Below are positions 652 through 29,214 of a stretch of DNA of 64,000 nt, piece after piece. This DNA is from Ostrea edulis. Taxonomy: Eukaryota. The first letter of the stretch is position 1; every line of letters begins with the position of its first letter. The stretch lies in NCBI RefSeq assembly GCF_947568905.1, contig NC_079166.1:26784001-26848000 (forward strand). The letters run 5' to 3'. The notes under the pieces are model-generated. The model was given only the letters and a program-made list of their open reading frames with translations, searched no databases and was not told the origin of the DNA. The position numbers were made by a program, and so were the translations under genes.

Positions 652-3600
652 CCTGCTGCCGGTGCAGGTGCTGGAGCTGGTTGTCCAAAGGAACCAGCTC
701 TTGATTTGTTAGCCAGCATCGCACCAGGTACTCCCACGGATGGTGGTACACCTTAAATATATACATAAATATATATAAACAGGTTATCTCCAATACATTT
801 GTGTACTATAAATGTTTGGAATCCACCAAATCTAGTCAATGATGTTTGACCATCATATCAAATCCTCAAATCATGTTTCTCAACCCAGCCCACTTACCCA
901 TCATGGGGACTCCATTAGTCATGATGGGCACGCCCATACTGCTAGGTGCTACCACAGTAGAGGCCATTCCCATCGCCGGCATTCCTAAATTACAGGAACA
1001 TTTTTGCTAATTTTTTACTTGTAAATATCCATGGATATTTCTAACAGGCAAATTAAGAGTTTGTTGACTTTATCATCTTTTCATTTTGGGCAATATTAAT
1101 CCTGAATTAACTGCACTACATGTAATTTTGAAAGAGTGACATCATACTTAGTACGCGTGATATTACAGATATATCGTAAACTTAGTACACATGTGATATT
1201 ACATATATATCGTACACTTAGTACACATGTGATATTACATATGTATCAAACACTTAGTACACATGTGATATTACATATATATCATACACTTAGTACACAT
1301 GTAATATTACATATATATCGTACACTTAGTAAACATGTGATATTACATATATATCGTACACTTAGTACACATGTATATATATCGTACACTTAGTACACGT
1401 GATATTACATATACAGTGGAACCCCGTTATTACGTTCCCCCTTTATTACGTTAGTCCGCATATTACGTTGGAATTTCAAAGCACAAAACCATTTCTTAAC
1501 AAACCTATATAAAATAGACCTCGTTATTACGTTGTCCTAAAATGCAGGGACTCGGTATTACGTTGTAAATATTCCGACAAAAACGTATTAAACCCCTAAT
1601 TATTCAATAGTGATTCTCAAAATAATAAGCCATTCACACCTTGACTGCCTGAGGCAGTCACCACGTAAATTTCCTGGTCTGTTTGGGGATTAGAGACGCT
1701 TGACTGATCATGCTTCGATAGATCTAGCGACATAATACAGGTGAATACCCCGTATAGAAGCCAGTGATAAACAATTAAATAATGTTTATTTAGAAATTGT
1801 ACTCTATGAAATTTACTTCATTTTTCATATTTTGATAATCAAAGAAATAATTTCTCATCCACCTGCGTGTTCAGCATAGTGTGATTACCTTCGCTATTAA
1901 AACTCTATTCACGGACAGCTTTGGTACCAAACAAGAAAGACAAAATTTATCGTAGCAATGTTACAACCGCTTGGGTAACTGTTTGGACATAGGTGACTAA
2001 AGGTGTTCAATTTAAAAAATTGTTCGTTGTTTGGACATGCAGTTTGTGTGTTCGTAAATCTCGTCCATACATACACCAATATATCGGCCGATTTGTGTAC
2101 AGCATTTACCTCAGTGAATATTTTAAAATCCCTTGATGCGCACGTGATTTTAGTGCCATCATTTAGCGTTATAAATGAAATCTTCGTACATCACTATACA
2201 TTTTTTTTATGTGGATTGCGCTTAAATTGTTCTCCGTGCATGTTTATCGTTGATGAGAAGTGTGCAAGTGTTGGGTATCGTGTGCGTTTTGTGTCTATAG
2301 TTTTGTTGTTTTTTGGGTGGGATTTTTTTATTGTGTTGTGTATTGTGTAATTAGAGAACTTAATAAAAACGATGTTTCGTTATTTTTTAATACGAATGTT
2401 GAATACGAACCGGAATGAGTTATTGAGAGAAATTTACATGAACGCATTGTTTTAAAGTTGAACAAAATGGCGGTCCAAACGAATGAAGAAAAAAAGCAAC
2501 GTCTATCAAAACATCCTTATGTATCCTACACCGAAATAAAGAAAAGGGATAAGAACATGAAGAATTACGGACATTAAAGATAAGATGTAACTAAAACAAA
2601 GTATCATAGTCTTTTAAACAAAGAAACAGTAAAGATATATTCACACACCCCTTCACGGAGTACCAACGGACGATATACAATTTCCAAATGGTATTTTTAA
2701 TGGATTTAACTGGGAACGTTTATTACGTTGCCCCCGGTATTACGTTATTTTATCGTGACAAAATGGAAAACGTAATAACGGGGTTCCACTGTATCTCGTA
2801 CACTTAGTACACATGATATTACATATATATTGTACACTTAGTACACATGTGATATTACATATATATCGTACCCATTCCCATCACAGGTTGTCCTGCCGTG
2901 GATATGGCACCAAACGATCCCATGGACGGCGAAGGGTCAGCTTTCAGTGATGGTGGAAGTGTTTTTGGAAGCTCAAATCCTTGCAGCTTCTTTTTTATTA
3001 AATGCATCGCTATTGAAAACTCTTTTTTGTCCATTTTGCCATCACTGTTCATGTCAGCTAGTTGCCTGGAAACACAGACAGAACATATTTGAATGTTATT
3101 ATGCACTGTTCAGCAAAACATTTCCTACCCACGTAACTTTCATGCTAACGCGGTGAAAAATAATTAGGCCCCATTATAGATTTGTCTCGCGTTATCTAGC
3201 TACTTTAAAGTCACAATACTTTTGTTGAACGGGTACAGTTTTAAATTTGCCCACACATAATATACATGTTAGTGAAATGGGTGAAAATAAAGTGAAGAGC
3301 AAAGACCCGCACTTAACAAAATACACAAACATATACATTATATAATTACATATACAATTCACCATGACATGATGAAAAATAACTATGAAATTGAAATTTA
3401 ACATCCACTGATAATTACTATCAGCTATGCACTAGATCTGTCCCACAACTATGGGGTATAAATAAACTCAGTCTAATTAAATTCAGATCTTCTCCAACTG
3501 TTAAACTGGAGAAGGTATAAAGGTTAGAGAAGATCTGATTTTGATTCGATTGAAATAATCTTAGAAAACATTATCCAATACCATCTCACAAATGTTTATG

Positions 3601-6600
3601 CAGTCAATAATTTCCTTTAAATGTAGGTTTATTGAACATGTTTTATCCCAAATCTGTGAGTGTCCTAGGTCCATGTTAAGTGGATATGACATTTCAAATC
3701 AGCGTTTCTTAAGTTGGAGAGGGTGGTTTGTGTCTCTGTGTCTTTGTTGCATGACAACCTTACCATATCTGCCCTAAAACAGCTGTTGGCAACCCCGACT
3801 GCAGGAAAAACCCTCTCGCTTGTTCTCCTGTGAAAATCAACAACAATCTCTTAGATAAAGAACTTAGTCTACATGTAAAAGATTAGCCAGCTTATCTTGA
3901 AATTCTGTTAAAACCTTTACTGAATTCACAAGCACCTGCTGCTGTTGACAGGTTTGGGGAGTTTCTAGTTAAAAACCTTTACTGAATTCACAAGCACCTG
4001 CTGCTGTTGTCAGGTTTGGGAAGTCTCTTGTTAAAAACCTTTACTGAATTCACAAGCACCTGCTGCTGTTGTCAGGTTTGGGGAGTTTCTTGGTTATTGC
4101 TTGGAATTGCCAGGTTATCTAAACATATAACCGGTTTTTGTAGCAGTCATCCCTTGCTACTAAAATCACACTTAATACATGTACAACAGACTGTTCCTTT
4201 AATTCCAATTTTGTAAATGTATTCAAGCTAGTCTCCGAATTAACTGATGTGTACTGTACTTGACATCAACATGTAAAAGAAATTATGACAGCTCTAGTGC
4301 TGTCAAGATTAAACGAAAAGTCGGTAAACTGCAACAAAAACACATTCAGTTCAGTTCATATTTTCCAAATTTCCGTTTGGTTTATGTTTCACAATATCCC
4401 ATTTTCTTTGCTGCAAGCGATACGTTTGGGTCGATATTTTTATCATTATTATTCTAACCAATGAAATATGAATTTCATGTAACATCGGTAATAGTAAAAC
4501 GAAACATTGTGACATGTGCAAATCACAAGGTGAAAATACTTTTAATTATTCTTAGAAGGGGAGAGACAGAAATTTTTAAATTGCAGTGTGCAAAATATGC
4601 AAGTTCGAGTTTACGTATGCATTAGGATCGCGGTAACTCAGTGGTATAGAGTGTTAACTTTGTGACTGGGAGATCGTGCATTCCAGCCCCACTCAAACCC
4701 GAGACATGATTGCTCCATCACCAAATGCAGAACATTCAAAGGTGAAATTAAGTCACAGGTTTTTTCGGAATATGACCTTAAAAACAGAGGTCCCATGTCG
4801 CTAAAGGCACTGACAAGTTTAAGAACCCTTACTGTTACAGGCCTGAGCACCATGCATTGGTCTAACCTTGCTGTACCTAACCTACAGCTTATAGCCAAAT
4901 ATAAACATGGTCAAAACTCTTCAGAGCTTATGTTGCCTATTGCATTGTACATATTAGCTTTGTCTTAAAATAAATATCATTTACCTATTGCTATTTTGTT
5001 ATTAAAATTTGTATAGATCAAAATGCATTAGAAATTTATAACGAATACTAATCACTTCAGGGTCCACATTATTCTTGAATTCACTAACGTATTTTATCAC
5101 ACAAAATAAAACCGAACCAACAAATAACAAGATTTTGTTTCCTGGCATGGATTTCTCAAAATAATCTTATGTCGAAACTTGCACTTACTCAAATTTTGAC
5201 TACTCAAGTGAAGTAAACTCAAACTTAAGTTTGTAATGAGATTTTTTCGAGAAATCCAAGCCTGCCCAGATCTGAACCAGAATTGTGCGAATCACGACAG
5301 CCGTACACAGCCTGAACCAGAATTGTGTGAATCACGACAGCCATACACAGCCTGAACAGATCTGAACCAGAATTGTGTGAATCATGACAGCCGTACACAG
5401 CCCGAGCTTTCACTAACTTCTTACCTGTAATGAAGCCATTGACAGGCTTAAGCTGGAAGAACTGCGAGTCATGCTTAGCACGATCTTCACCTGTTATCTT
5501 CCAGGCTGCTGCCCCTGGAAATTAAAATTAAACCATATCAAATTAACTTACTAACCGACGCAAAGGGCTTGTTAGAATTAGTCTGGGCTAGAAAAAATTG
5601 TCTCAAAAAAATAGCCCCTGCATGGGCTTAAGAAGAATTACGATAGAAAACGGGAATTATAGCCAAAAAAACTATGATTGAATTCACTTTTCCTTCCCAA
5701 ACAAACTATGATCGCGTTAACTTTTCCTTCCATTACCATGTCACTATAACACTTGTTACTTTGACTAGATAACACTGTTGTTGAAAAGCATTTTAGCGAG
5801 TGTGAATATTGTATTCACGGAAATCTTCACCCCCATATCATTTTGCCCCTTTCGCCCCCTCGACGGTGGGCAAATTTAAGACTAGATAAAACTGTCTTCA
5901 CATCTTCGTTTTAACACAATATTTAAAATGAGACGAAACCGTCTGCAAGTGTTGAGAGGTGAAAATAACGGGGTGAAATAATCCTGTATATATACAGCAT
6001 GTCACAGACCTACAACATGAATGCCTTTAAAAGTCAAGTGTGGTGTCGAAGCAAAACATAGGGATGGAAATGAAACTATTGTAAAAGTGGTTACTTACAC
6101 TGGGGGTTAAGTACACGTTTTCCACGACCAACATTACACAGGAGGAGGGGGGGGGGGGATACGCATTAATTTAACTCAATATAATATATATATTATACCA
6201 AATATTCATAACAACTATACGCATGGGGGAAATTTACACACTTCTTTTAGACCGCATTATTAGCGTAAATTTCCCTCATATGTAAATAGTCACTTATACA
6301 GTAAAAACAAGTATAAGATATATGAGGAGAAATTAACCTTTTAAATGTGGCTTTCATATGATGGTAACTTGGACCTAATGGTTTGCACACTGTGTAGCAA
6401 AAAAAAACAAACACCCTGACTTAGCGAATATTGAAACAAAATAATAGGATGATGCCACATTATTCTGATTTTTTATTTGATTTTTCTGGGATAGTAAGAA
6501 TGACAAATCCATTAGCCCTATGGGCTTGTGGCTTAGGAAATTTTTTCAAGATTGACTGTACTGGAAAGTTAAAACACAAAGCCTGGTGAAATAACCACTG

Positions 6601-15277: not shown

Positions 15278-15564
15278 CATTTCAGAGCATTATCTGCTTT
15301 TCTTCATCACTGCATTTCTTCAGAACATTATCTGTAACTTTTCAAAATGGTACAGATATCGGTATCAACATAAACTAAGTTGGAAAACCCACTAAAAATC
15401 ACATCAAATACACCCCAACAGTTACCGGAACTTGAACTGGATTGTGGGAAAAGTAGGCGTGATATCAACTTCCTGTTGTAGTCTAGTTTCACTTTACAGC
15501 ATGTGATGTAAAAACAAACGACTGTTGTTAGTGGCTTTCAAGTGTTTAATGCATAGAGAACAGG
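15278..15564. promoter_or_regulatory. Putative bidirectional promoter and non-coding first exon of intersectin, shared with CRYZL1
   Basis: A minus-strand donor ATG|GTAAGC sits at 15278/15277. ETS-like CCGGAA (about 15426) and ACTTCCTG (about 15469) motifs are present. The CRYZL1 ATG is at 15565. A strong minus-strand acceptor (TTTTATTATAG) at 8473-8474 precedes the ITSN ATG exon. The TSS is not determined. Confidence 0.5.
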
Positions 15565-18500
15565 ATGAAAACTCTAATTTTGGATGTTCAAAATGAACAG
15601 GAACCGAAATTCGTTTTAGAATCTAATGTAAACTTTTCTCCCTTGCAAAATTAATATCACGTCTCTGTAAACGTATAAGAAAAGTCTTAGCCACTAAAAA
15701 TATGCACCCTGTGTTTTGAGATTTCTATAAAATCGCGTGGTTTGTATTGCAGGAGGCTGATCCTATCCCAGATAAATATGACGTAGTTGTCCAAGTGAAG
15801 GCATGTGCATTGTCGACGCCTAATATCAAGGTAGCAATATACGCGAGCCAGCGGATCAAAGGATCTAATTATATCTCCCCTCTTTCAGGGGAGACATATT
15901 GTTTTTGTACTGTCTGTCACAAAATCTTGTGATTGCCTCTCCTCCTATATGGCTTATCGGATAGACTTGAAACTTTGTACAATTATATATGCTTCATTGC
16001 CATTTGTAGATGTGCATATTGGTGGAACAGGAGAATTCAATTATAATGTTTATTATATTTAGGGTGTCTGGGTAGCACAGAGGTAGCGCTCTCACTTCCC
16101 ACCGCTGCAACCAAAGTTTGATCCCCATGATCGGCAGTGGTTGTATGTGAGAGAGTATGACGGTTTCCCGTTCGGACACAATTGGGTTTCCTCTGAGTAT
16201 TCAGATTTCCTCCTACATAACTAACCCCCTAACGCAAACATCCATGCATCAAAGGATCCCATTCCGTGCATCAAAGGAGCCCATTGGAAATAAGCTGTCA
16301 AGCTTTCATGGGTTACCCTTGGTATTTATATCTGTATGTATGCATGTATATATTATACCGATACTTATATGGCTTATTCACAGGGGCAAAGCCTGTTTTA
16401 GGCCCAATCTCTGATACTATAAATATTGTATTTATAGTATCACAGAGTTTGGGCCCAAAACGGGCTTAGCCCCTGAGGGCTTATAGGATATATTTGAAAC
16501 TTTGTGCAGTGCTTCATTGCCATTTGTAGATGAAACAGGAGAATCCAATTATTTTCCTTCAATTTATAGTGGATCTAAGAGGGGTGGTGGATGTAAAATA
16601 GCTTGTGAAAATTTCTCCTCCTATGTGGCTTATCAGATAGATTTGAAACTTTGTACAATTACCATTTGTGCATATTGCCGGGACAGGAGGATCCAATTAT
16701 TTTCCTAAAAGTTATAGTGGATCTAAGAGGAGTGGAGGATGGTTTATCAGAGTTCATAATGTCTTCCTGCTCATGCTTTCTCCTCCATACCATGCAGTAC
16801 AATAAGGGGAGGAGGGTTTATTTGGAGTACAGCTTCCAATTTGGGGAGCTGGGGAGACATTTGTTTTTCATAAAAATTTTAATTAGATACATGAACCAGT
16901 CCTTCAATCTGATTAAAATCAAATACTTTGATTCGCATGACAATACATTACCAGAGTGGATCAAAGATCTGATTTTAATCACATTGACCAGACCGTTCGA
17001 TTCAGTTAAAAGAATATAATTCATATTTCTTTTCAGTCTGATTGGTTGATGAATTGGTCAGATTCAATCAATGTGTTCTCACAAAATAGACACTAAATAG
17101 TTAACAGATTGCAGAGTATTTTGTTGAAAATGCCTCTCTCATCATACTGATCTCCTCTCAATATACTGATCTCCTGCATAGAATGCTGAATATCATAATA
17201 TATATCACGTACATTATGAAGCATTATCCTTTTTAAATCTGCCCTGGATTTCTTGTTGTAAAGAGTATTTAATTGAATAAAATATTATATTACAGTACTT
17301 TTATATGAGTTCACAAAATAAGTGCATTTCCAAGTTTGTATAATTAGATATATATCTGATTTAATATGTATACACATTACAACAACTTTTCTGATATTGG
17401 CAGGTTCTTTCAGATGTGTACAGGAAGCACCCTCGCAGTAGATACCCTGTAGGGTATGAGGTGGCTGGTGTTGTCACGGAAACTGGGCCTGGTGTCAGTA
17501 ATGTAACTATTGGTGATTCGGTTGTTGGTAAGTCATTTTTTTGTGTATTTTGTTTTCTCTATTGTCTCTCATGACATAGGTTGAACAGTATGTGTAGAAT
17601 TCACCAATGGCCAATCTTCAGATATTGAAGGGTATTTGTCATTTCTGTGTTTACATCTTTCAATCACATAATTTTGTGATTTTGAACATTTGGAAGAATG
17701 ACTAAGGTTAGAATAAAAGTGCTGGAGATTGCCTCTACTTTATCAACCTGCACTTTGGGCCAATTCATGCAACCTAAGTTTGCTTGTAAAAGACCTTTTA
17801 AAACTGAAAACTTGCATGGAGCATACAGTGGAGTGGCTATCATTTATTGTATCTTCAAGATAAACATAATAAATAATTTATCATATAAGGGAATGGTTCA
17901 CGTTTTTCGAAAGAAATGTTTTTCATTTTTGATGTTACAAATTAAAAATATAGCTTGTTTAATGATGGCAACCACAATTTGGACTGTCTAAATGTGAGGA
18001 TAAGAGCAATATTTTAGCTTTGATTCTGTTATGTAAACAAAGACTCAAGTCTTTTTATGTAAACAAACAAACTAGTGAAACGTTAATTTTGTTATCATTT
18101 TATGTAAAGTATACTTGAGATGTGATATAAATAATAAACTTGGATCAATATCCATTTATTTTGAAAACCCCATAAACTATAACATACCTCAATCTTTGTT
18201 TTCAAAACAAATAACAAACTCTCTCTCTCTATCATGAGCTTCTGTCATGATGAATAACCTGATTTTTTGTGAAACCTTCTAAACATATTGGACAGTAGAT
18301 TTTGAACAATTAAAGTGAAAAACAAAATTTGGACGAAAATCGTGAATCAGTCCCTTTAATGTTAGCTAAAGAAATTTAAATCTAGGAAATTCTTTTATTG
18401 ATATTTTTCACAAGATTGAACCACAAAAGGGCCATAAAACTTTCAACTAACATAGTGTTGAAGTTTGAACTAAGATTCACTTTTATGAAAGGAATATACA

Positions 18501-21500
18501 TGCAGTGATAAAGAAAAATTCTAATGAGAAGTGAAGATTTATGGTCCTATAGCATTGATCTCATCATTTAACCTGGGATTAAATTGTATTAAATATTTCA
18601 TGAGAAAATGCAACTACTTGTATTTACTGAAAGGTGAGCAATGTTGTCCATGGGCCTTGTGTTTCACAGGCCTGTGATCTGTATAATATACTCCCCTTTC
18701 TTGTATTATAATAGGTATTGTGTCCCTGGGAAGTCATTACTCTGGCTGTGGGGAGTATTGTCTACTCTCGGAATATGACGTTGGTAAGTTGACACATTTT
18801 TACCTCTTTTAATGATACTGCAATGTCTTGAGTTCTAAATGTATATCGCTAATGTATGCTAAAATTTTAACATTAGTGCCAAATCTTGATTGTGGTAAAT
18901 ATATCTTATATGAAATGACTAGCACTAAACTCTGAAATCCGCTAATTAAAAGTACACATTCATACAGTTTTCTCAACAGTTACAGGAATATTTTTCATAA
19001 CCAGGATCATAAACTGAAAATTTTTCATCTAAATACATGTACCTGTTGAAATGAAATGTAATCAATAAATCAACATTAATTGTCTAAAGCTAATATGTAT
19101 GCATGTACATTGAAATTTGTTACATGTAAGTAGATTTTATCAATCAAATTTCCTCTCAAATCCGTCTACCATGGTTTATGAGATGTTTTGAAAAATATAA
19201 TTTGAAACTGCAATTAATGTCTGATTTTAAAACACATGGTTCTTAAAAACAGAACAAAGTGAAATGACCAGAGATGGTTTTAATTTGAATTGCAACAAAA
19301 TTTTGCAAATGTATGAAAGCTGTTTTCTGCTCTATTTTCAGTAAAGAAGCCAGACCGGCTGAGTTATGAAGAGGCAGTAGCAGGAATTGGAGACTGTTTA
19401 AAGGCCTATACTGCTATGTACTATCAGGCTCATGTTTGTGGAGGTGATACGGTCCTTGTTATAGATGGTGCCACCTCATTCGGAAATGTTGCCATACAGT
19501 TAGCTAGTCTCTGGGGAGCAAAGGTTTCACAATATTCTTATAACCTTGCACGTGCATCTCAAATGTAGTAATGTTATGGCCATCTGGGAGACTATTTATT
19601 ATGCCACCAATAAGTCTGTAAATTGTGTAACTGAGATTTAATGACGTCCATTTTAAATCATGTTCATGAACTAAATTTCAGGTGATTTCTACGGCTAGTA
19701 GTAATGAAGAAAGAGGAATTCTGGAAAATCTAGACACCCCAATAGGTAATTGTATACAGACTCGTGTACAGTATTAATATATAAAATCTAGACACCCCAA
19801 TAGATAATTGTATACAGACTCGTGTACAGTATTAATCTATAAAATCTAGACACCCCAATAGGTAATTGTATACAGACTCGTGTACAGTATTAATCTATAA
19901 AATCTAGACACCCCAATAGGTAATTGTATACAGACTCGTGTACAGTATTAATATATAAAATCTAGACACCCCAATAGATAATTGTATACAGACTCGTGTA
20001 CAGTATTAATCTATAAAATCTAGACACCCCGAACAATATTTATATATACACGTTCACAAAATACGTTTTAAATGACCTTGACATATATTTGCTTTTGACC
20101 TCAACGTTTCAGTTTTCCTATCTTGAATAGTTCAAAAGTGTTGGTTAAATTCAAAGTTGCACATATAGATGAAGAAACACATAGCAAAGAAAGAAAACTT
20201 GCTTACAGCATTGAATTCTAAATTCTTAAAAATTAGTATTTAGAGTACATGATAGATTAATAGGCACTTTTTTCTCTTCATGTATCATACCTATTGACAT
20301 TGACATATTGAATTCTATTCGTTCGGATCCTTTTGAGGTTCTCTAATCATCAACCTTTTATCAGCACAGATAATTGACCTTGACCAGAGAAGTAACATCC
20401 TGGTCAGCAGTGTGATGGAGGAGACAGGAGGTGTGGGGGTGGATGTTGTCGTTGACAATGGGGGTAAGGAAAGTTTGCAAGATTTATCTATTGATTTACT
20501 GACAAAGTTAATAGATTCTGATGTTTTTTATCCTGTAATACCATGAATTTTATTTTCTTAGTCAGACAATTTAATGATGAAGAGGACCAGAAGGTTGTGG
20601 GTGAAAACTTAAGGTATCCCAAACCACACAAGCATGATGTCATTTCCTGTCTAGGGGCCTCTGGGAAGTGGATTACACAACAATCTTCTCTTCAGGTATT
20701 GATACTGATAAAATCAAATATATTATGCTGTTTGTAGATATCTGGATTTCTAGTCAACTCGTACCCTGACCGACTCGTACCCAGGTCAACTCATACCCCA
20801 TAGGTCAACTCGTACCCAAAAGGCAAAAGTCATCTCGTACCCAAGAATCTTCCCATAATGCAATATATCTATGCGCATATAAGTGACATATCGCTTAGGT
20901 ACGAGTTGTCATCAATTAAAGAGGAGGAGTCAACTCGTAACCAGATTCTTGGGTACGAGTTGACTTTTACCTTTTGGGTACGAGTTGACTTATTGGGTAC
21001 GAGTTGACCTGGGTACGAGTCGGTCAGGGTACAAGTTGACTTGACTCCGATATCTGTACTGTGTCTTTTTATAGTTGCTGTATCCATCGAGTTGAAATGG
21101 TATAGGTCTATACAAGTACATGTATTTGTTGAGAAATAACATCACATTGGATAAAGCAAATAAAAGTAATGGGATTCAAGAGGAACGGAGTGAACTAAAC
21201 TGTCTGCATTACCTGACATTGCTTGTGTATCCATTTATCAATATAAAGTACCTTTGTAGGTCTTTAAAATGTGAATCCAATTATCTCCCCTCCATGGCTC
21301 TAGCAATCATTTAAACAATAAAATACTTTCTTTGTTGTTTCATTAGGTTGCTGAGGGTAGCAAGCATTGCAGGAAAAACAGAAAAAATTCATAACCCACT
21401 TTTTTCTGCAATGATTACTACCGTCATCGTCTATTAAAACAACAAGGAGAGACATTTTATTTTGAAATAAATAATAAAATCTTTAAAATACATGTATGAA

Positions 21501-24500
21501 CTTTTAAGTACTAAAATATCACATCCTTGACCCATTTTGAACTTTAAACCCTTTGACCTTGATGAGACTCCATATCTATTATAAATGATAGTGCGGAGTG
21601 GTGGTACTAAAAATATGGATTGAAATAATTTGAAGCAAACATGTTGTATTCATTGTCACAGAAATATAAGAGAAAATATTCAGTGAATGTAAATATATGA
21701 ACAAACCTGAAACCACAATACTCAAGGATACATCAATATCAATTTGTCAATCTGTAGACTTCAAGTTCATAAACAAAATAGGTTTCCTTATAATATATTA
21801 ACAATTCAATCCAGAGATAGAGTGACATTGTATCATTTAACATGTTGTACAAACCACATGTCCAAGAGGGATAATATAACCAGAGATTGTAATGTATAAA
21901 TGTACACAAAATTTTTATGTAAATAACAAACCATCTTATGAATGATTAAAATAAGCCTCTGATCTATCATTGCATCAAAACATCATGATTTATAATTCTA
22001 CGTTACAGTGTACCATTTTAACACTTGTATTTAATCTTCTGTCTTTTTAAGTTGGATCCACCAGACTGCCAGCGATTGTTTCTTCGAGGAGGAAGCGTTC
22101 ATTTCCTGTTTGAGAACATATGGACTCTGGCATACTCCCAACATGGACGATTTCAGCGTTAGTATTTAAAACATATCGTCATGCCCCTCTGAAAATATCA
22201 ATACATATCCTTCCAAGAAAATATCACTATTATTTTTCTGAGTCATTCAATATCACCATCATCATTCTTCTTCTAAGTTAGACATGCAAATCGATCCTCA
22301 AAATTCAGCATTGGGTCAAGACTAATCGAACCATCTATAGACAACAGACAAATTTTTTTCCCCAATTTCATATTCAGTTGACCTTCGGTATCTTGAACAT
22401 CAGTATCTCGAATACAATGAATATATTGAAGTGAGTTGGAAGTCCTCACTACATTTTCTCGATGTATTTCAACCTCAATATCTCGAACTATCGGATATCT
22501 CAAAATGTTTTTTCTTGGCAATATAGGGTTCAATATAACATGATTTGACTGTAATTCTATCAAGCAATCACTGGTTGTAAGGGGAGAAATCAAAAGATCA
22601 ATTTTGGATAAAAATCTAAATTCGGATAATTAGGGGTAAGGGGTGAACATTTCCCTAAGTTTCTGTCATCCGACATTGATTACACAGTTAATGTAGTGGA
22701 AGGAGAAAAAAGACAAGTGACTGTTAAAAACCATTTTGCATTTTAATGAACATTTAATAGTTTTAATCTACATTTTTATTTGTGAATAAACATTAAAAAA
22801 GGTATACAGTGTTATTTATACTAGTTTGTTCTTACTTGTTAATCGATTAGTTTCAACAGTCATCATATTTAGTTTTAAAGTAGGGGGGGGGGGGGGGGGG
22901 GGGGGGGAGGGAGTCTTGGTAAAAACTATGTGAATTTTGATTTTTATCAGACATTGAACTTTTGATCTCGCATCTAAGATGTTAATTTACAAACATCAAC
23001 ATCTCTGTAAGCACAACTAACAAAATGCATATAACCTACACATGTACATAAGATATTTTCTATATCTACTTGTAGAGTATGTGTACATGTATTCAAAGGT
23101 ACACTACTACTTTATGTAATCATAAATATGATACATGTATATTTCAGGATGTTCATTTGATTTTGCAGTTGCCCATCTATGACTTTCTGAGTCAAAGGAA
23201 TGTAATGTTTATTTATAACTTGTATAATTTCCATTTGTAGACATTCTCCAGGATACAATAGAAAAACTGGAACGAGGAACAGTCAAGTAAGTTAAAATAT
23301 TTGTACTCTGAATAAATTACACACACACCCTCCCCCAGATTACTTATACAGTCAAATAAGTTAAAAACTTGTACTACTAATCCTCTGAATTAACCCTAAC
23401 CCCCTAAGTTTACTGATACTACTAATCCTCTGAATTAACCCCCACCACAAGATTACTGATCCTACTTCCTCTGAATAAATTACCCCACGTAGAGATTGTT
23501 GACCCTGCTTGGACAACATTACAAATTTCAAGATCACCACCAATTGTATAAAATAAAAATACGCCCATTTCATTGCTCTTAAAACAATTCCAACATTCAA
23601 TGTCTTTACATAATATAAATTTTACCCAAAAAACACGAAGATGTTTAACAACTTTCAATTTCCATGAAAATATGCATGTCCCCAGTATTCATACTATTAA
23701 CTGTATGAAACAATTCATCTTCCCAAGTCAAGGGTTTCTGATCGCTTCCCTCCACATATGTGGGAAGATGGAAACAATTATAAATACTGGGAGAGTAGTC
23801 ACACGGAGAAACCGTGCACCCTCACCTTACAATCTAATTTCACATAACACTGCATAAAGTTTATATAAACAGGGAAGCGAACCATGACAAAAGTTGAATC
23901 AAAGTTTGCATTTTCCATATAGGAGGAACATAGCAACTTTTAATTCAGTCTGTGAAAGCCACTAGCTCTCGACATTTTTCTAAAATCTAATAATAAAATA
24001 TTATTCCTGTAAACACACTATTCACATGAATAGGTTTTTTACAGGAAGAAAAACATGTTTTATTATAGATGTTTAAAACATTGAGAGTCTGTGGTGAAAA
24101 CATACATGAGATAACACCAACAGTGCAAAAATAAACACAGATGCACCAACACAGGGTAGATGGACAGACAAAGCTGTATTAAACTTCTATTGATAGGCAT
24201 ATAAAAATTACAGCTTGGATTTCATAAAAGTTAAGTGTGATGACTTGCAAACTATGAGCAAATCTTGGAAGCAATCCATGAATGCAAGTTTCCTGTGGTG
24301 TCCATTCTCCCCGCCGCTCGTATACATTCAAATCTGCATCAATTTATCAAAATTTAAATTACTTGGCAATAATACAAAATAATTTTGCCATCCTTCCTAT
24401 TTTTCAGGTGTAAAATATCAAAAACTTTCACACTCGATGATGCAGTTGATGCCATGAAAAATCTAGAAGAATTTCGTACGGGAAAAGTCATAGTCAAGAT

Positions 24501-24504
24501 CTAG
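15565..24504 (+). CDS. CRYZL1: Quinone oxidoreductase-like protein 1 / FERRY subunit Fy-4, 353 aa. Exons: 15565-15627, 15753-15830, 17404-17527, 18715-18783, 19342-19523, 19682-19745, 20365-20463, 20562-20695, 22052-22157, 23241-23286, 24408-24504
   Basis: Eleven GT-AG exons give 1062 nt in one frame ending TAG. Motifs VQVKACALS, YPVGYEVAGVV, KPDRLSYEEA, KAYTAMYY, VLVIDGATSFGNVAIQLA..WGAKVISTA, EETGGVGVDVVVDNGV, KPHKHDVISCLGASGKWIT, LQLDPPDCQRLFLRGG parallel human CRYZL1 (VKACALS, DGASAFGTIAIQLA, EETGGLGVDIVLDAGV, PHKHDII.LLGVGGHWVT, LQLDPPDS..LFLKGA). Confidence 0.95.
16062..16330 (+). mobile_element. tRNA-headed V-domain SINE nested in the HINE
   Basis: GGTAGCACAGAGGTAGCGC A-box-like and AGTTTGATCCCC B-box-like motifs. 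GGGTTTCCTCTGAGTATTCAGATTTCCTCCTACA resembles the V-SINE consensus GGGTTT.CTCCGGGT.CTCCGGTTTCCTCCCAC. Confidence 0.6.
16381..16475. mobile_element. 95-bp palindromic MITE nested in the HINE
   Basis: CAGGGGCAAAGCCTGTTTTAGGCCCAATCTCTGATACTATAAATA pairs with TATTTATAGTATCACAGAGTTTGGGCCCAAAACGGGCTTAGCCCCTG. Confidence 0.75.
19725..20030 (+). repeat. 58-bp minisatellite (5 units plus a partial) containing the end of CRYZL1 exon 6 and its donor
   Basis: TAGACACCCC recurs at 19731, 19789, 19847, 19905, 19963 and 20021. Confidence 0.95.
20744..21048. mobile_element. Foldback-type MITE (about 305 bp) with about 100-bp TIRs built from GTCAACTCGTACCC repeats
   Basis: Left arm 20753-20849 and right arm 20944-21040 are reverse complements. 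Flanked by GATATCT(G) at 20737 and 21049 (7- or 8-bp TSD). Confidence 0.85.
22375..22551. mobile_element. Degenerate Tc1/pogo-type MITE
   Basis: CAGTTGACCTTCGGTATCTTGAAC / GTTCAATATAACATGATTTGACTG+TA, with internal ATATCTCGAA motifs. Confidence 0.55.
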
Positions 24505-25795
24505 AGTGCATTTCTCTTTCTCATCTTCACATTCTTTTGTCCCTGTTATACTATATGTTGTGGTTGGTATTTCTGTATAAATTGCATGCAAGGTTTTTCT
24601 CTGCAGAAAGAATAAATGAGAAAAATATTGGTTCCTCCAAATTTATTAACATCACCAAACGGGATCTGAGGTATAATTTTTTTCTTTACCAGTGTGAAAC
24701 CGTTAACAGGCATAGAACAAGAACACAATGATTTAGACCTGAATCATTGACAACCATTGAAGCTGCACGTGTGCGTGGGCTGACATCGATTACACCAACA
24801 GTGTTTATATTTAAAAAGGGGCAAAACTCTTGCACAGCATGCACAAACATTTGACTAATACACCCAAATACTTGGAAAAAAATTCAAGCCATTTCCACAA
24901 CTGTTAGCCTTGGGTATATCATATAAACCAAATAAAAGTTAGAATATTCATTGCATAACAAATGTTTAGATTTAAATATTTTTTTCTTGAGCTCCATAAT
25001 AATGCTTTAGCTCTGGTCAATTTTAAAAACAAAAAAGAGAAACCAAAACATCTAAAAGCGATCATTTACAAAACATAAAAAGATCATTTAAATCAATGAC
25101 TTCAAACATAATCAAATACATAAAATACCTCCACGCTATTACCGGTAAACAGCTGATAGCTAATTGAAAGCTGGAATGGAAATTGACAGAAAAATTTCAA
25201 ACACATGTAAAATGTCAAAAGTTTTAGACAAGATTTATAAACACAACATATATTGTCTATCACTTTTCTCAAAATGCAAAAAGTTCTCGGAGCCAGTTAT
25301 CAAATCCTTAATGTTTCTTTAACATTTGTCTTCAAGTCCTGGGCATACATAATCAAGTCTAACTTGACATCCTATTCTTAAACTAGAGGAGCAAACTCGG
25401 TTTAGTCCACAATTTACTTGCATAAGTACACATAATTTGATTACCAGACTTCAAAAGGCAACCTAGTATCTGACTAGATCGAGTACAATGGTTTCATTTA
25501 GGTACCTGTATTGGTACACTGTATATTGAATGCCGCCAAGGACAAAACACGTAATGAAAAAAGAAATCGCTGTTAGAAGATCATCCACATATTTACATGT
25601 AATGAAAACAGGGTACTTGCCCATCATCATGAATGAATGAATACAAATACTTTTATAAAACATGAACATGGAAAGTCTACAAATCATGCAGTATTTAAGC
25701 TACTATCATGTACAGCACAGTACACATGCACTCGGAGTCAAACCACTCGAACAACATGGATATGTAGACAAACGCGGGAACATACGGTGGCTAAA

Positions 25796-27832
25796 TCATT
25801 GCGTCTTCTTTTCCCGGGGTTTCCATGACTTCAGAAGTTGATATGAAAAGTACACACCAAATGCATGAACCTGAATGGCTATGAAAAGAAATAGGTAGAA
25901 CACGAGAACTGCCGGGTATCCAAAAAACTGTCCTTGGAATCTTTTTTCATTTAAATATGCGTATAAGTCATCACTTTGTTCAACGAACCCATAGACCACG
26001 GGAAGAATACCGAAAATTACAGATCCCACAACATACTGCTTCAGAAGTCTGATTTCATTCCTGGCCATGGAACGCCACCCTACCATCACCGCCATCAGGC
26101 ACACGACCCACGCATACTCCCAAGGTCGCGGCGGTGGAAAGCTCCATTTTCTTAGCGTGGATACTGGTCCGACACCGAGGAATGAGGTCAGTCCGGGCAG
26201 GATTCTCACTATCATCAGCAGACCCAAGGAAAGATGAACAATAAGGTCGGTCCGTAACCGGGACTTGTTCAGGGAACTACAACGAAAACGAACCCATTTG
26301 AAGAATAATACATAGAAAGTGTGTATGTGCATCACAAGCAAAGTGCCATGTTTTATGATCACCATACTATCCAATTCAATCATGTGCCTGGGTTAATAAA
26401 TACTGAATACTGTATAGCATACAATTCTATTTCCTTTCAGTTTTTGCAGATGAATTCCAAGACTGCAGTGAAAATGTAACAACACTCTGGACATAATATG
26501 GTACATTTCTTATGCAGTTAGACCTCCAGATTTTTCCCCCTCTGGTTTTAGCGTTTAGTCTAATGGTATTCAATTGACAAATAATATTTTGATTTAATAC
26601 AATGATACAATACCTACATCAATCAAGTCATTGCCATTATATCTCACTGTTGTGTTTTATGAAAAGCCAGCGGGGGTCAGAATTCTATCCCTGTAGCTGT
26701 GTATTTACACAATGTACCACAGAGCAACACGTGATGAGTTTCAAATGACCATGCAGGAACGAGTAGTTAACACAGACAAATGGTTTTTAAGGAGAACAGA
26801 ACATTTTGACCTGGAACAGTGCCCTTGATGGAATGTGTGATGTGAGAACAGAACAATTTTAGTTCAGAATGGAATGGTTCATTTGGTATTATATAGTAGC
26901 TTTACTTTAAGGTTTGCAGTACATTTCACCCACCTGATATCATGTATGCATATCATCAAATATTTACATTTCCAGTGTTTTTGCCTTTGGTATATTTTTA
27001 CAAATTGTAATGATAGCAATTTCCTCATGATTTATTGCAGTTGTGAACAATGAGCGTATGAATCTTGATATGTATAGTAGTTAAGGCTATATTGACAGTG
27101 TCTATCAGCCTGGATAGCTCAGTGGTTAGAGCACCTGACTAGTAATTCAGGGATCCTGGGTTTGATTCCCGATCCTGCAATAGATGTTCTCCTTTCCCCA
27201 CATTACAAAAGTATCGTACATCTATCTTTACGGCTAGCAAATGTTGACAGAAATGAAAGTAGAATGTAACTATAAGAAATAAATCTCATATCTAAAAAAT
27301 ACATGAACACCATTACTAATGCACTTTGTGAAGTGTCACAGTTTATACCTTCATGTACTGCATTTTAAATATACATGTGGTATATATCAGCACTCAATAT
27401 ACAGATCTACATCATAAATCAATCGTTTTTTGACAAATCCCTTAGGTTTTACATCACAAGTTTCACACAAAATATAAATGAAAATATGTCATTTTCAATT
27501 GTGAGAATTATTTACAAAGAACTTACTCTTTCATCCACGGTGCACTGTTAAACATTTTCACTGATACCGTAGCCTCCCTAAAACCCAACTACTTGTACAT
27601 ATCTTCTGGCAGGAAATACTATAGCCTACCAGTAACATCTGATACAATATCTCGAGATGCTGCACATTATTTAATTTACCATCAGACAAAACACAGACCA
27701 TCACGTTACATCAATACAATAACGTAGAGCTTTGACCTCATACCTAAATTTATATTGCCAGGCAACACTCTCCCTGTGCCAGTGATCGCTCCCGTCCGTA
27801 CCAATAGGTCGAGATCCATATTTGGATGCCAT
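25796..27832 (-). CDS. JAGN1: Protein jagunal homolog 1 (ER membrane protein), 189 aa. Exons 27744-27832 and 25796-26276
   Basis: N-terminus MASKYGSRPIGTDGSDHWHRESVAWQY matches the jagunal signature (GTDGSDF.HRE.VA). Exon 2 has WEYAW, four hydrophobic segments, IAIQVHAFGVYFSYQLLKSW and a basic C-terminal tail. A single phase-2 GT-AG intron. Confidence 0.95.
27071..27207 (+). mobile_element. tRNA-Thr(AGT)-like sequence within a short TGTA...TACA unit (SINE head or Helenus-type solo LTR)
   Basis: 27106-27180 GATAGCTCAGTGGTTAGAGCACCTGACTAGTAATTCAGGGATCCTGGGTTTGATTCCC follows metazoan tRNA-Thr(AGT), but the acceptor stem is broken. The unit begins TGTATAG and ends ATTACA. No matching TSD. Confidence 0.55.
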
Positions 27833-28150: not shown

Positions 28151-29214
28151 ATGAGTTTATTTAAACCATCTCATGTTTTTGCTAATCTTCCTGATACAGC
28201 ATCAGAAATGAACAAGATGAATTCATTCGCAAATAACGAGAACCAAATAACAGAGGCCAAGATTGACAACCGTGTAATCCAAGTTTCCTCTGTTGGAGTA
28301 GTGACGTTGCCTCCTGACAGATGCAAACTAACCGCTAGAATAACATCAACAAAGGAAAATGTTTCAGACGTTAAAGAGAGCACCACAAGAAGACTAGATT
28401 ATATAATACAGACGTTTCATAATCATTCAGTAAAGGTTAGTGATTCAAGTTTTTAAGGCAATTGATGTGAAATGTTAGGTTAGAATCCATTTGTGATGGG
28501 TGTGCAAACTTTTTCATAATGATTATGTTAGGGTTGTGTATTGGTCAGATTTTTTTGTGATGCAATGTATAATAATTTGAATAAGCAATTTATACTGAAT
28601 TCATTTTATGAAGTAATTCAAATTACATTGTACCAAATGAAAACTTTTAATCAATAAATTAGTCTATTACACCATGGCCAAACGTCATTTGGATACACCC
28701 ATTCCTATGCAGGATACAATCGTGCTTTTAACACAGAGTACAACCAACCACTACGGCAATTTATTATGGAGAATGTAGATGTCCATGAAGAGGGGTTAGA
28801 AAGTGGCCCAAATTTTTATTTATACATATAATATTAAGAATAGATAAAGCCTATCAGGTGATGGGATGAATTCTGGTTTGAATGATGATATAACATTCAG
28901 TCAGATCCCATACCACTTTCTCAACCACTTCAACTTCAACAGAGACTCTACAAAATTTTGTGTAAATTGGTCTCAGTCCTTCGTTTTCTTCATTTTGTTA
29001 GAAATAGAAAACTTCACAAAAAATTCAATATAACCACTGAAAGACAAAATTATTAGAAATGTATACCATAAACATCAGGAAGAAAACTTTACAATTATTT
29101 TTTTTTTTTTTTTTTTTTATTTCACTCAATCAACATACATTTGCACAAAAGTAGATACAAAAGAATATGAATATATTTAAGCGTACATATATATATTATA
29201 ATGTTCATTTTCTT

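What the first reader, a model, noticed from the sequence alone, without database searches (positions are those of the whole stretch)
15565..24504. An intact invertebrate CRYZL1/Fy-4 suggests the larger FERRY complex predates vertebrates
Sequence: a complete 353-aa protein with CRYZL1-specific motifs (DGATSFG in place of the usual zeta-crystallin glycine-rich loop, PHKHDVI, LQLDPPD) in the orthologous genomic position. Recalled, to be verified: the original FERRY description placed the appearance of Fy-4 and Fy-5 at the invertebrate-vertebrate transition, based largely on insects and nematodes. Inference: Fy-4 is ancestral and was lost in ecdysozoan models, so bivalves may have endosomal mRNA-carrying FERRY with four or five subunits.
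Basis: partly seen in the sequence, partly recalled or inferred. Interest (0 to 1): 0.7.

Follow-up and report, generated by a model that had tools for sequence, protein, structure and literature searches.

The report
Oyster CRYZL1 (FERRY Fy-4) gene, already annotated
The window holds an intact, expressed flat-oyster (Ostrea edulis) orthologue of human CRYZL1/Fy-4, but it is already named as such in RefSeq, and the FERRY paper's own supplementary table already lists Fy-4 in molluscs including a bivalve, so the finding is correct but ordinary.

Summary
An 11-exon gene on the + strand (15565-24504, all introns GT..AG) encodes 353 aa with the motifs DGATSFG, PHKHDVI and LQLDPPD.

The protein is 100% identical (353/353) to RefSeq XP_048766060.1, [quoted passage not shown]. 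Spliced contigs from two probable RNA runs reproduce all seven junctions in the stretch that was laid.

Orthology to human CRYZL1/Fy-4 is firm:
- PDB best hit is 7nd2_C at 1.6e-76, against 2.5e-20 for the next quinone oxidoreductase.
- The maximum-likelihood tree gives a CRYZL1 clade with 100% support, whose branching follows the species tree.
- The AlphaFold model matches the human Fy-4 crystal structure best (TM 0.88/0.93).
- The four named Fy-2-contact residues are R/D/E/K in the oyster, against K/D/E/K in human.
- Intersectin lies head-to-head upstream, and the two genes are also neighbours in mammals.

[quoted passage not shown] Fy-4 and Fy-5"). The inference that Fy-4 is ancestral also holds. 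It is not new, however. The paper's Supplementary Table 1 already lists Fy-4 in Mizuhopecten (all five subunits), Octopus, Biomphalaria, Lottia, a sponge and Acanthamoeba. RefSeq also names the protein in many bivalves.

Oyster PPP1R21 and complex assembly could not be tested. The scan had not reported this gene before on other DNA.

The parts
15565..15627 (+). CRYZL1 exon 1 (ATG at 15565, aa 1-21)
   Evidence: donor AAT|gtaaac, phase 0. The translation is identical to P0265.
15753..15830 (+). exon 2 (aa 22-47)
   Evidence: acceptor ttgcag|GAG, donor AAG|gtagca.
17404..17527 (+). exon 3 (aa 48-88, GroES-like ADH_N part)
   Evidence: for the splice sites. Pfam ADH_N at 6.9e-06 on this exon alone.
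18715..18783 (+). exon 4 (aa 89-111)
   Evidence: RNA contigs cover 18714-18781 and join to exon 5.
19342..19523 (+). exon 5 (aa 112-172); holds DGATSFG at 19464-19484, in place of the usual GxGxxG cofactor loop
   Evidence: this exon alone hits human CRYZL1 7nd2_C at 2.6e-12, with the next hit at 3e-4. DGA[ST]xxG runs through the family, against GAGGGVG-type loops in the outgroup MDRs.
19682..19745 (+). exon 6 (aa 173-193)
   Evidence: junctions 19523/19682 and 19745/20365.
20365..20463 (+). exon 7 (aa 194-226)
20562..20695 (+). exon 8 (aa 227-271); CRYZL1-specific insert with PHKHDVI at 20624-20644
   Evidence: the only significant PDB hit is human CRYZL1; the insert is absent from the outgroup MDRs. 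It corresponds to human aa 225-239, which become ordered when Fy-2 binds.
22052..22157 (+). exon 9 (aa 272-306); LDPPD at 22052-22066; R304 (human K299) at 22148-22150
23241..23286 (+). exon 10 (46 nt, aa 307-321); D311, E314 and K315 (human D306, E309, K310) at 23252-23266
   Evidence: the only candidate with good splice sites and the right phase; joints 22157>23241 and 23286>24408 appear in two runs. for conservation.
24408..24504 (+). exon 11 (aa 322-353, TAG at 24502-24504)
2858..3109 (-). context: intersectin EH-domain exon of the head-to-head upstream neighbour
   Evidence: Pfam EH at 5.1e-07; the best PDB hits are the Intersectin-1 EH domain (2khn, 3fia) at 2e-13. Further EH-like exons lie near 5417-5521 and 334-528.

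Best explanation
This is the single-locus Ostrea edulis orthologue of human CRYZL1 (quinone oxidoreductase-like protein 1, FERRY subunit Fy-4). It is an intact, spliced and transcribed 11-exon gene encoding a 353-aa medium-chain dehydrogenase/reductase-fold protein (shown). By homology with the solved human complex, it most likely forms a symmetric homodimer that is the central body of a FERRY-type Rab5 effector. Two PPP1R21 (Fy-2) chains would wrap that dimer through linker segments and a 'vertical helix' lying in the dimer cleft, positioning the Fy-2 coiled coils that bind mRNA and Rab5 (inferred). The contact helix (R304, D311, E314, K315) and the family-specific insert that becomes ordered on Fy-2 binding are conserved. 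This argues that the scaffold role, and not only an enzymatic one, is old. The gene family is ancestral to animals and was lost in holometabolous insects and nematodes. This is already visible in RefSeq annotation and in the FERRY paper's Supplementary Table 1.
For: - The gene model gives 353 aa, 100% identical to RefSeq XP_048766060.1 of O. edulis.
- Spliced contigs in two probable RNA runs match all seven junctions laid.
- PDB search: human CRYZL1 7nd2_C/8a3o scores 1.6e-76. The next hits are 2.5e-20 (4dup) and 5.6e-20 (human zeta-crystallin 1yb5).
- Word search with the annelid orthologue: CRYZL1-named proteins reach E<=1e-48, then there is a gap to generic MDRs at E>=1e-17.
- ML trees: the CRYZL1 clade has SH-aLRT 100 against MDR outgroups. 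The window protein sits inside oysters, then pteriomorph bivalves, then Bivalvia (95), then molluscs.
- AF2 model pLDDT is 92.5. The top Foldseek hits are human Fy-4 8a3o_A (TM 0.88/0.93, rmsd 1.9) and 7nd2_C (0.92/0.92). Other QORs score TM about 0.77 with rmsd about 4.
- Human Fy-2-contact residues K299, D306, E309 and K310 align to R, D, E and K. The D and K positions are nearly invariant in 47 family members and differ in the outgroups.
- Intersectin lies head-to-head upstream. Mammals have the order ITSN1-CRYZL1-DONSON.
- Table S1 lists all five subunits in the bivalve M. yessoensis.
Against: - No FERRY partner of this oyster was examined. PPP1R21, TBCK, C12orf4 and GATD1 lie outside the window and no reference sequence could be obtained for them. 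TBCK and GATD1 are known here only from unchecked scan notes.
- The 'P95full' label in Table S1 is also given to Drosophila. It therefore does not show that molluscan Fy-2 carries the Fy-4-binding linkers.
- The loop equivalent to human 293-297 is only partly conserved (AYSQH against SNVQQ).
- The authors state that Fy-4 keeps a full set of catalytic residues, so a free enzymatic role is not excluded.
- No protein-level or interaction data exist for any mollusc.
Confidence: 0.9

Rival explanations
1. The protein is a true CRYZL1 orthologue but works in oysters mainly as a free NADPH-dependent enoyl/quinone reductase. The FERRY scaffold role would then be a later, lineage-restricted addition.
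For: It has an MDR fold with GroES-like and Rossmann domains. [quoted passage not shown] The family exists in amoebozoans and other protists, where no FERRY has been shown.
Against: The canonical glycine-rich cofactor loop is replaced by DGA[ST]xxG throughout the family. The residues most specifically conserved against other MDRs include the Fy-2-contact D and K and the LQLDPP/insert region. The presence of P45 tracks that of P25 across most species of Table S1.
Confidence: 0.15
2. The gene belongs to another MDR/QOR subfamily (zeta-crystallin, VAT1, PIG3) and only resembles CRYZL1 superficially.
For: It shares generic Pfam domains (ADH_N, ADH_zinc_N_2) with all MDRs.
Against: There is a 56-order E-value gap between human CRYZL1 and the next PDB hit, with CRYZ, VAT1 and PIG3 all weaker still. 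The clade has 100% support. The structural best hit is human Fy-4. The family-specific insert and motifs are present.
Confidence: 0.01
3. The locus is an unexpressed or decaying copy, and the intact reading frame is fortuitous.
For: None found. A minisatellite does repeat the exon 6 donor five times.
Against: The ORF is intact across 11 exons. It is 88-90% identical, without gaps, to other oyster orthologues. Exon-only coverage and exact spliced joints appear in two runs.
Confidence: 0.01

Closest known systems
Human CRYZL1 / Fy-4 (UniProt QORL1_HUMAN; PDB 7nd2 chain C, 8a3o)
   Same: The two have the same length class (353 against 349 aa) and about 40% identity over nearly the full length. 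They share the MDR fold (TM 0.88-0.93), the DGA[ST]xFG loop, the PHKHD insert, LQLDPPD, and the contact residues D, E and K, with R in place of K299. Both have intersectin as a neighbour.
   Different: The oyster insert is 4 residues longer and more acidic. The loop equivalent to human 293-297 differs. The downstream neighbour is Jagunal/SIMPL, not DONSON. No complex data exist for the oyster protein.
RefSeq XP_048766060.1, quinone oxidoreductase-like protein 1 isoform X2 [Ostrea edulis]
   Same: Identical, 353/353 residues. It is the same gene.
   Different: Nothing differs. RefSeq also predicts an isoform X1 (361 aa) from an alternative first exon at 16157-16321.
Bivalve CRYZL1 orthologues (Crassostrea gigas XP_011451160.1, Saccostrea, Mizuhopecten yessoensis, Pecten, Ruditapes, Mya)
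   Same: Identity is 88-90% to other oysters and about 60% to scallops and ark clam, and all align end to end. Most are already named quinone oxidoreductase-like protein 1.
   Different: Only ordinary species divergence.
Zeta-crystallin / NADPH:quinone oxidoreductase (CRYZ, PDB 1yb5)
   Same: Same MDR superfamily fold. 1yb5 was the molecular-replacement model for the Fy-4 crystal structure.
   Different: E-value is 5.6e-20 against 1.6e-76, and TM is 0.74 with rmsd 4.4. CRYZ has the canonical glycine-rich loop and lacks both the PHKHD insert and LQLDPP.

Membership tests
CRYZL1 / Fy-4 orthogroup | MDR two-domain fold (GroES-like plus Rossmann) | tested here: met
   Pfam ADH_N 3e-09 and ADH_zinc_N_2 3e-09. 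AF2 model pLDDT 92.5.
CRYZL1 / Fy-4 orthogroup | Closest solved or known protein is CRYZL1, not CRYZ, VAT1 or PIG3 | tested here: met
   7nd2_C scores 1.6e-76, against 2.5e-20 for the next hit. The top three Foldseek hits are human Fy-4 chains.
CRYZL1 / Fy-4 orthogroup | Falls inside a supported CRYZL1 clade whose branching follows the species tree | tested here: met
   The clade has SH-aLRT 100, Bivalvia has 95 and the oysters have 100. The outgroups were metagenomic MDRs, not the oyster's own paralogues.
CRYZL1 / Fy-4 orthogroup | Family signatures: DGA[ST]xxG loop, 20-35 aa insert ending in PHKHD, LQLDPP | tested here: met
   All three are present in the window protein and in nearly all of the 47 family members aligned. 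They are absent from 9 outgroup MDRs.
CRYZL1 / Fy-4 orthogroup | Conserved neighbourhood with intersectin | tested here: met
   Intersectin-type EH exons lie on the - strand upstream. The mammalian order is ITSN1-CRYZL1-DONSON. DONSON was not found downstream; Jagunal and SIMPL lie there instead.
CRYZL1 / Fy-4 orthogroup | Intron positions shared with human CRYZL1 | not tested
   No human gene structure was available in the tools. The oyster intron phases are recorded.
Five-subunit FERRY complex | Fy-4 surface that contacts Fy-2 (human K299, D306, E309, K310; loop 293-297; segment 225-239) | tested here: met
   The four charged positions are R, D, E and K. The D and K positions are nearly invariant in the family. 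The insert is present and the loop is partly conserved. Only the residues named were tested, not the whole interface.
Five-subunit FERRY complex | PPP1R21 (Fy-2) with Fy-4- and Fy-5-binding segments in the same genome | not testable with these tools
   It lies outside the window and no PPP1R21 reference sequence was obtainable. Table S1 gives 'P95full' for M. yessoensis but also for Drosophila, so the label is not discriminating.
Five-subunit FERRY complex | TBCK, C12orf4/FERRY3 and GATD1 present in the same genome | not tested
   Unchecked scan notes mention TBCK and GATD1 exons elsewhere in this genome. Nothing was found on C12orf4 or PPP1R21.
Five-subunit FERRY complex | Physical assembly, Rab5-GTP binding and mRNA binding | not testable with these tools
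   This needs biochemistry or multimer modelling.
Zeta-crystallin-type NADPH:quinone oxidoreductase | Canonical glycine-rich cofactor loop and closest similarity to CRYZ | tested here: not met
   The loop reads DGATSFG. CRYZ 1yb5 scores only 5.6e-20.

The most novel reading that the evidence does not exclude
CRYZL1-type proteins that carry the family signatures are not confined to animals. The signatures are the DGASxxG loop, LQLDPP and the QQGRYLH-IL.D...K contact helix. They occur in the amoebozoan Balamuthia mandrillaris and in several protist transcriptomes, where they branch below the metazoan clade. Table S1 also has a row giving all five subunits in Acanthamoeba. Together these would make the Fy-4 module, and perhaps the whole five-gene FERRY set, older than Metazoa. 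It would then have been lost repeatedly (fungi, nematodes, flatworms, Holometabola). That is the opposite of the 'chordate innovation' stated in the paper's main text.
Probability: 0.55. Interest if true: 0.35.

Novelty: already known. Interest (0 to 1): 0.12.

Why it matters
The finding has modest value. It shows that the sentence in the FERRY paper dating Fy-4 and Fy-5 to the origin of chordates does not match the paper's own supplementary table or current genome annotation. Invertebrates with the full gene set, such as oysters, scallops, octopus, annelids, cnidarians and sponges, could therefore serve as comparative systems for endosomal mRNA transport. Drosophila and C. elegans, in contrast, are reduced cases. 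No new gene, family or mechanism emerges from this locus.

Tried and rejected
- The spliced 353-aa protein had no reference and I did not paste it, so the first external searches used single exons. This was resolved when the identical RefSeq protein P0265 turned up in a cluster look-up.
- The final Mol Cell versions of both FERRY papers are not held. The statements cited come from the last bioRxiv versions of July 2022.
- P0124 was first taken as an outgroup. It proved to be a very long branch (4.85) that jumped into the ingroup, so it was left out of the second tree and ignored.
- A search of scan notes for PPP1R21, C12orf4 and FERRY found nothing. Only first-reader notes on TBCK and GATD1 exist.
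- DONSON was looked for downstream of CRYZL1, as in mammals, and not found. The ORFs there are Jagunal and a SIMPL-domain exon.
- I considered and rejected a pseudogene, another MDR subfamily, and a gene-model artefact at the 46-nt exon 10, which is confirmed by spliced contigs.
Full report
**Observation.** Three-frame translation of 15400-24700 on the + strand showed a series of open stretches with MDR-like peptides. Using splice-site and phase rules I assembled 11 exons: 15565-15627, 15753-15830, 17404-17527, 18715-18783, 19342-19523, 19682-19745, 20365-20463, 20562-20695, 22052-22157, 23241-23286 and 24408-24504. All introns are GT..AG with pyrimidine-rich acceptors. The only non-obvious exon was the 46-nt exon 10. 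It was the single candidate with a good acceptor, a GTAAGT donor and the required phases. The window contains no N runs.

**Identity of the gene.** The spliced protein had no reference, so I first searched single exons.
- Exon 5 alone hits human CRYZL1 (PDB 7nd2_C, the FERRY cryo-EM structure) at 2.6e-12, with the next hit at 3e-4. Exon 8 has human CRYZL1 as its only significant hit.
- An exhaustive HMMER search with exon 5 returned 161 proteins (collected). The full-length ones score 1e-45 to 1e-107 against the assembled protein. Where named, they are 'quinone oxidoreductase-like protein 1' from a spider, a sea cucumber, a sponge, hemipterans, damselflies and frogs.
- A word search with the annelid orthologue listed the same name for many molluscs, including the bivalves Ruditapes, Saccostrea and Mya. 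CRYZL1-type hits reach E<=1e-48, and then there is a gap to generic MDRs at E>=1e-17.
- A cluster look-up showed Ostrea edulis XP_048766060.1 (isoform X2, 353 aa). My hand-built protein is 100% identical to it over 353/353 residues.

The window is therefore Ostrea edulis, and the gene is already annotated in RefSeq under the CRYZL1 name. Other oysters are 88-90% identical without gaps, including C. gigas XP_011451160.1. Scallop and ark clam are about 60% identical.

**Expression.** Two runs of one study (X1 and X2, guessed to be RNA) cover only the exons of the 18700-24520 stretch. Their contigs join 19523>19682, 19745>20365, 20463>20562, 20695>22052, 22157>23241 and 23286>24408, all GT..AG. 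They also join exon 4 to exon 5 with three variant letters at the joint. A DNA-type run (X3) covers the introns as well. The RNA contigs differ from the window at several third-codon positions, so they come from another population or a close relative. Because they are contigs, they show presence and splicing, not expression level.

**Orthology tests.**
- With P0265 as the reference, the PDB search gives human CRYZL1 at 1.6e-76. The next hits are a bacterial QOR at 2.5e-20 and human zeta-crystallin at 5.6e-20. VAT1 and PIG3 are weaker still.
- A maximum-likelihood tree of 47 family members plus metagenomic MDR outgroups gives a CRYZL1 clade with SH-aLRT 100. Its internal branching mirrors the species tree, with deuterostomes, arthropods, and nemerteans/brachiopod/annelid/molluscs. 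The window protein sits within oysters (100), then pteriomorphs (99), then Bivalvia (95).
- An AlphaFold2 model built on a 45-sequence alignment has mean pLDDT 92.5. Its best Foldseek matches are the human Fy-4 crystal structure 8a3o_A (TM 0.88/0.93, rmsd 1.9 A) and 7nd2_C (0.92/0.92). Ordinary quinone oxidoreductases follow at TM about 0.77 and rmsd about 4 A.

The tree has one limit. The outgroups were not the oyster's own MDR paralogues.

[quoted passage not shown] The PDB SEQRES index is UniProt+7, because all four named residues then fall on K, D, E and K in the printed alignment. In the oyster these positions are R304, D311, E314 and K315.
- Across 47 family members the first position is R or K in all but one.
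- The D position is D in 44 of 47.
- The E position is acidic in most.
- The K position is K or R in 46 of 47.
- In the nine outgroup MDRs the D and K positions are hydrophobic or polar.

The family-specific 20-35 aa insert ending in PHKHD and the invariant LQLDPP are present in the oyster and absent from the outgroups. The 293-297 loop is only partly conserved. This supports an old, conserved Fy-2-binding surface, but only for the residues named in the paper.

**Neighbourhood.** Upstream on the - strand there are EH-domain exons whose best solved relatives are the Intersectin-1 EH domains (2e-13). The arrangement is head-to-head with CRYZL1, in agreement with scan note s1-274722. Mammals have the order ITSN1-CRYZL1-DONSON. 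Downstream in the oyster there is a Jagunal ORF (25796-26383, - strand, 1.2e-41) and a SIMPL-domain exon (28151-28456), not DONSON. Only the intersectin side of the synteny is therefore kept.

**Comparison with the literature.** [quoted passage not shown] The survey, however, used PorthoMCL on all UniProt eukaryotic reference proteomes. Its Supplementary Table 1 lists P45 (Fy-4) in many non-chordates:
- all five subunits in Mizuhopecten yessoensis (a bivalve, taxid 6573), Octopus bimaculoides, Biomphalaria glabrata, the sponge Amphimedon and Acanthamoeba castellanii;
- four subunits in Lottia gigantea;
- further rows that I did not look up by taxid.

The taxids named above were checked. Model Holometabola and C. 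elegans lack P45 and P25 in the same table. Later reviews that I could read do not revisit the evolutionary statement. The final Mol Cell text is not held. One caution applies. The table's Fy-2 column reads 'P95full' for Drosophila too, so it cannot be used as evidence that molluscan Fy-2 carries the Fy-4-binding linkers.

**Mechanism.** Shown here: an intact, spliced, transcribed CRYZL1 orthologue with the Fy-4 fold and a conserved Fy-2-contact helix and insert. Inferred from the human structure: it forms a homodimer at the core of a FERRY-type Rab5 effector, and two PPP1R21 chains embrace that dimer and carry the mRNA- and Rab5-binding coiled coils. The main rival is a free NADPH-dependent reductase role. 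It is kept alive by the authors' remark that Fy-4 retains the catalytic residues. It is weakened by the replacement of the glycine-rich loop throughout the family. Scan notes mention TBCK and GATD1 exons elsewhere in this genome (unchecked).

The family is not confined to animals. A Balamuthia mandrillaris protein (P0024, 34.5% identical over 365 alignment columns) and several protist-transcriptome proteins carry the DGASxxG loop, LQLDPP and the QQGRYLH-IL.D...K helix. They branch below a supported metazoan clade, inside the family and away from the MDR outgroups. Together with the Acanthamoeba row of Table S1, this suggests that Fy-4, and possibly the whole gene set, predates Metazoa. It is a modest correction of a published sentence, not a new system.

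**Verdict.** Interest is low. The scan had not reported this gene before on other DNA.

Noticed in passing
window 19725-20030: A 58-nt minisatellite (5.3 copies, 97% matches) begins inside exon 6. Each unit repeats the last 21 nt of exon 6 plus its GTAATT donor. The spliced RNA contigs use only the first donor (19745|19746). This agrees with scan note s1-274805.
   Followed up: partly
window 16157-16321: The alternative first exon of RefSeq isoform X1 (P0266, 361 aa) lies in intron 2. It replaces aa 1-47 (the first GroES-like strands) with an unrelated 55-aa peptide. The isoform would lack part of the N-terminal domain, and no read support was examined.
   Followed up: partly
window 25796-26383 (- strand): A 195-aa single-exon ORF matches Pfam Jagunal at 1.2e-41. 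It is the convergent downstream neighbour of CRYZL1, where mammals have DONSON.
   Followed up: partly
window 28151-28456 (+ strand): A 101-aa ORF begins a SIMPL/DUF541 domain (Pfam 2.5e-06). It is probably the first coding exon of an IRAK1BP1-like gene.
   Followed up: no
window 20650-21040, 21235-21820, 22600-22990, 23575-23770: Introns 8, 9 and 10 hold very high-copy repeats. Summed contig depth in DNA-type run X3 is 8,000-55,000, against about 85 elsewhere. Two 16-nt tandem arrays lie in opposite orientation at 20753-20818 and 20975-21040, and a 29-nt G run at 22883-22911. These are probably transposon remnants.
   Followed up: no
Supplementary Table 1 of bioRxiv 10.1101/2021.06.20.449167: The table contradicts the paper's main-text statement that Fy-4 and Fy-5 arose with chordates. 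It also has false negatives. Branchiostoma floridae (taxid 7739) is 'NA' for P45, although a Branchiostoma quinone oxidoreductase-like protein 1 exists (P0201). 'P95full' is given even to Drosophila.
   Followed up: partly
window 18746-24474 (exonic sites): RNA contigs of runs X1 and X2 differ from the window at eight exonic sites, mostly T>C (for example 19415, 19445, 19469, 19490, 22102, 24474). The DNA run X3 carries a different set of variants. This suggests a distinct population or sister taxon, not RNA editing, but it was not resolved.
   Followed up: no
P0024 (Balamuthia mandrillaris KAL6080396.1) and protist proteins P0091, P0135: These are non-metazoan members of the CRYZL1 family with the family loop, LQLDPP and the contact-helix signature. 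They branch below the animal clade.
   Followed up: partly
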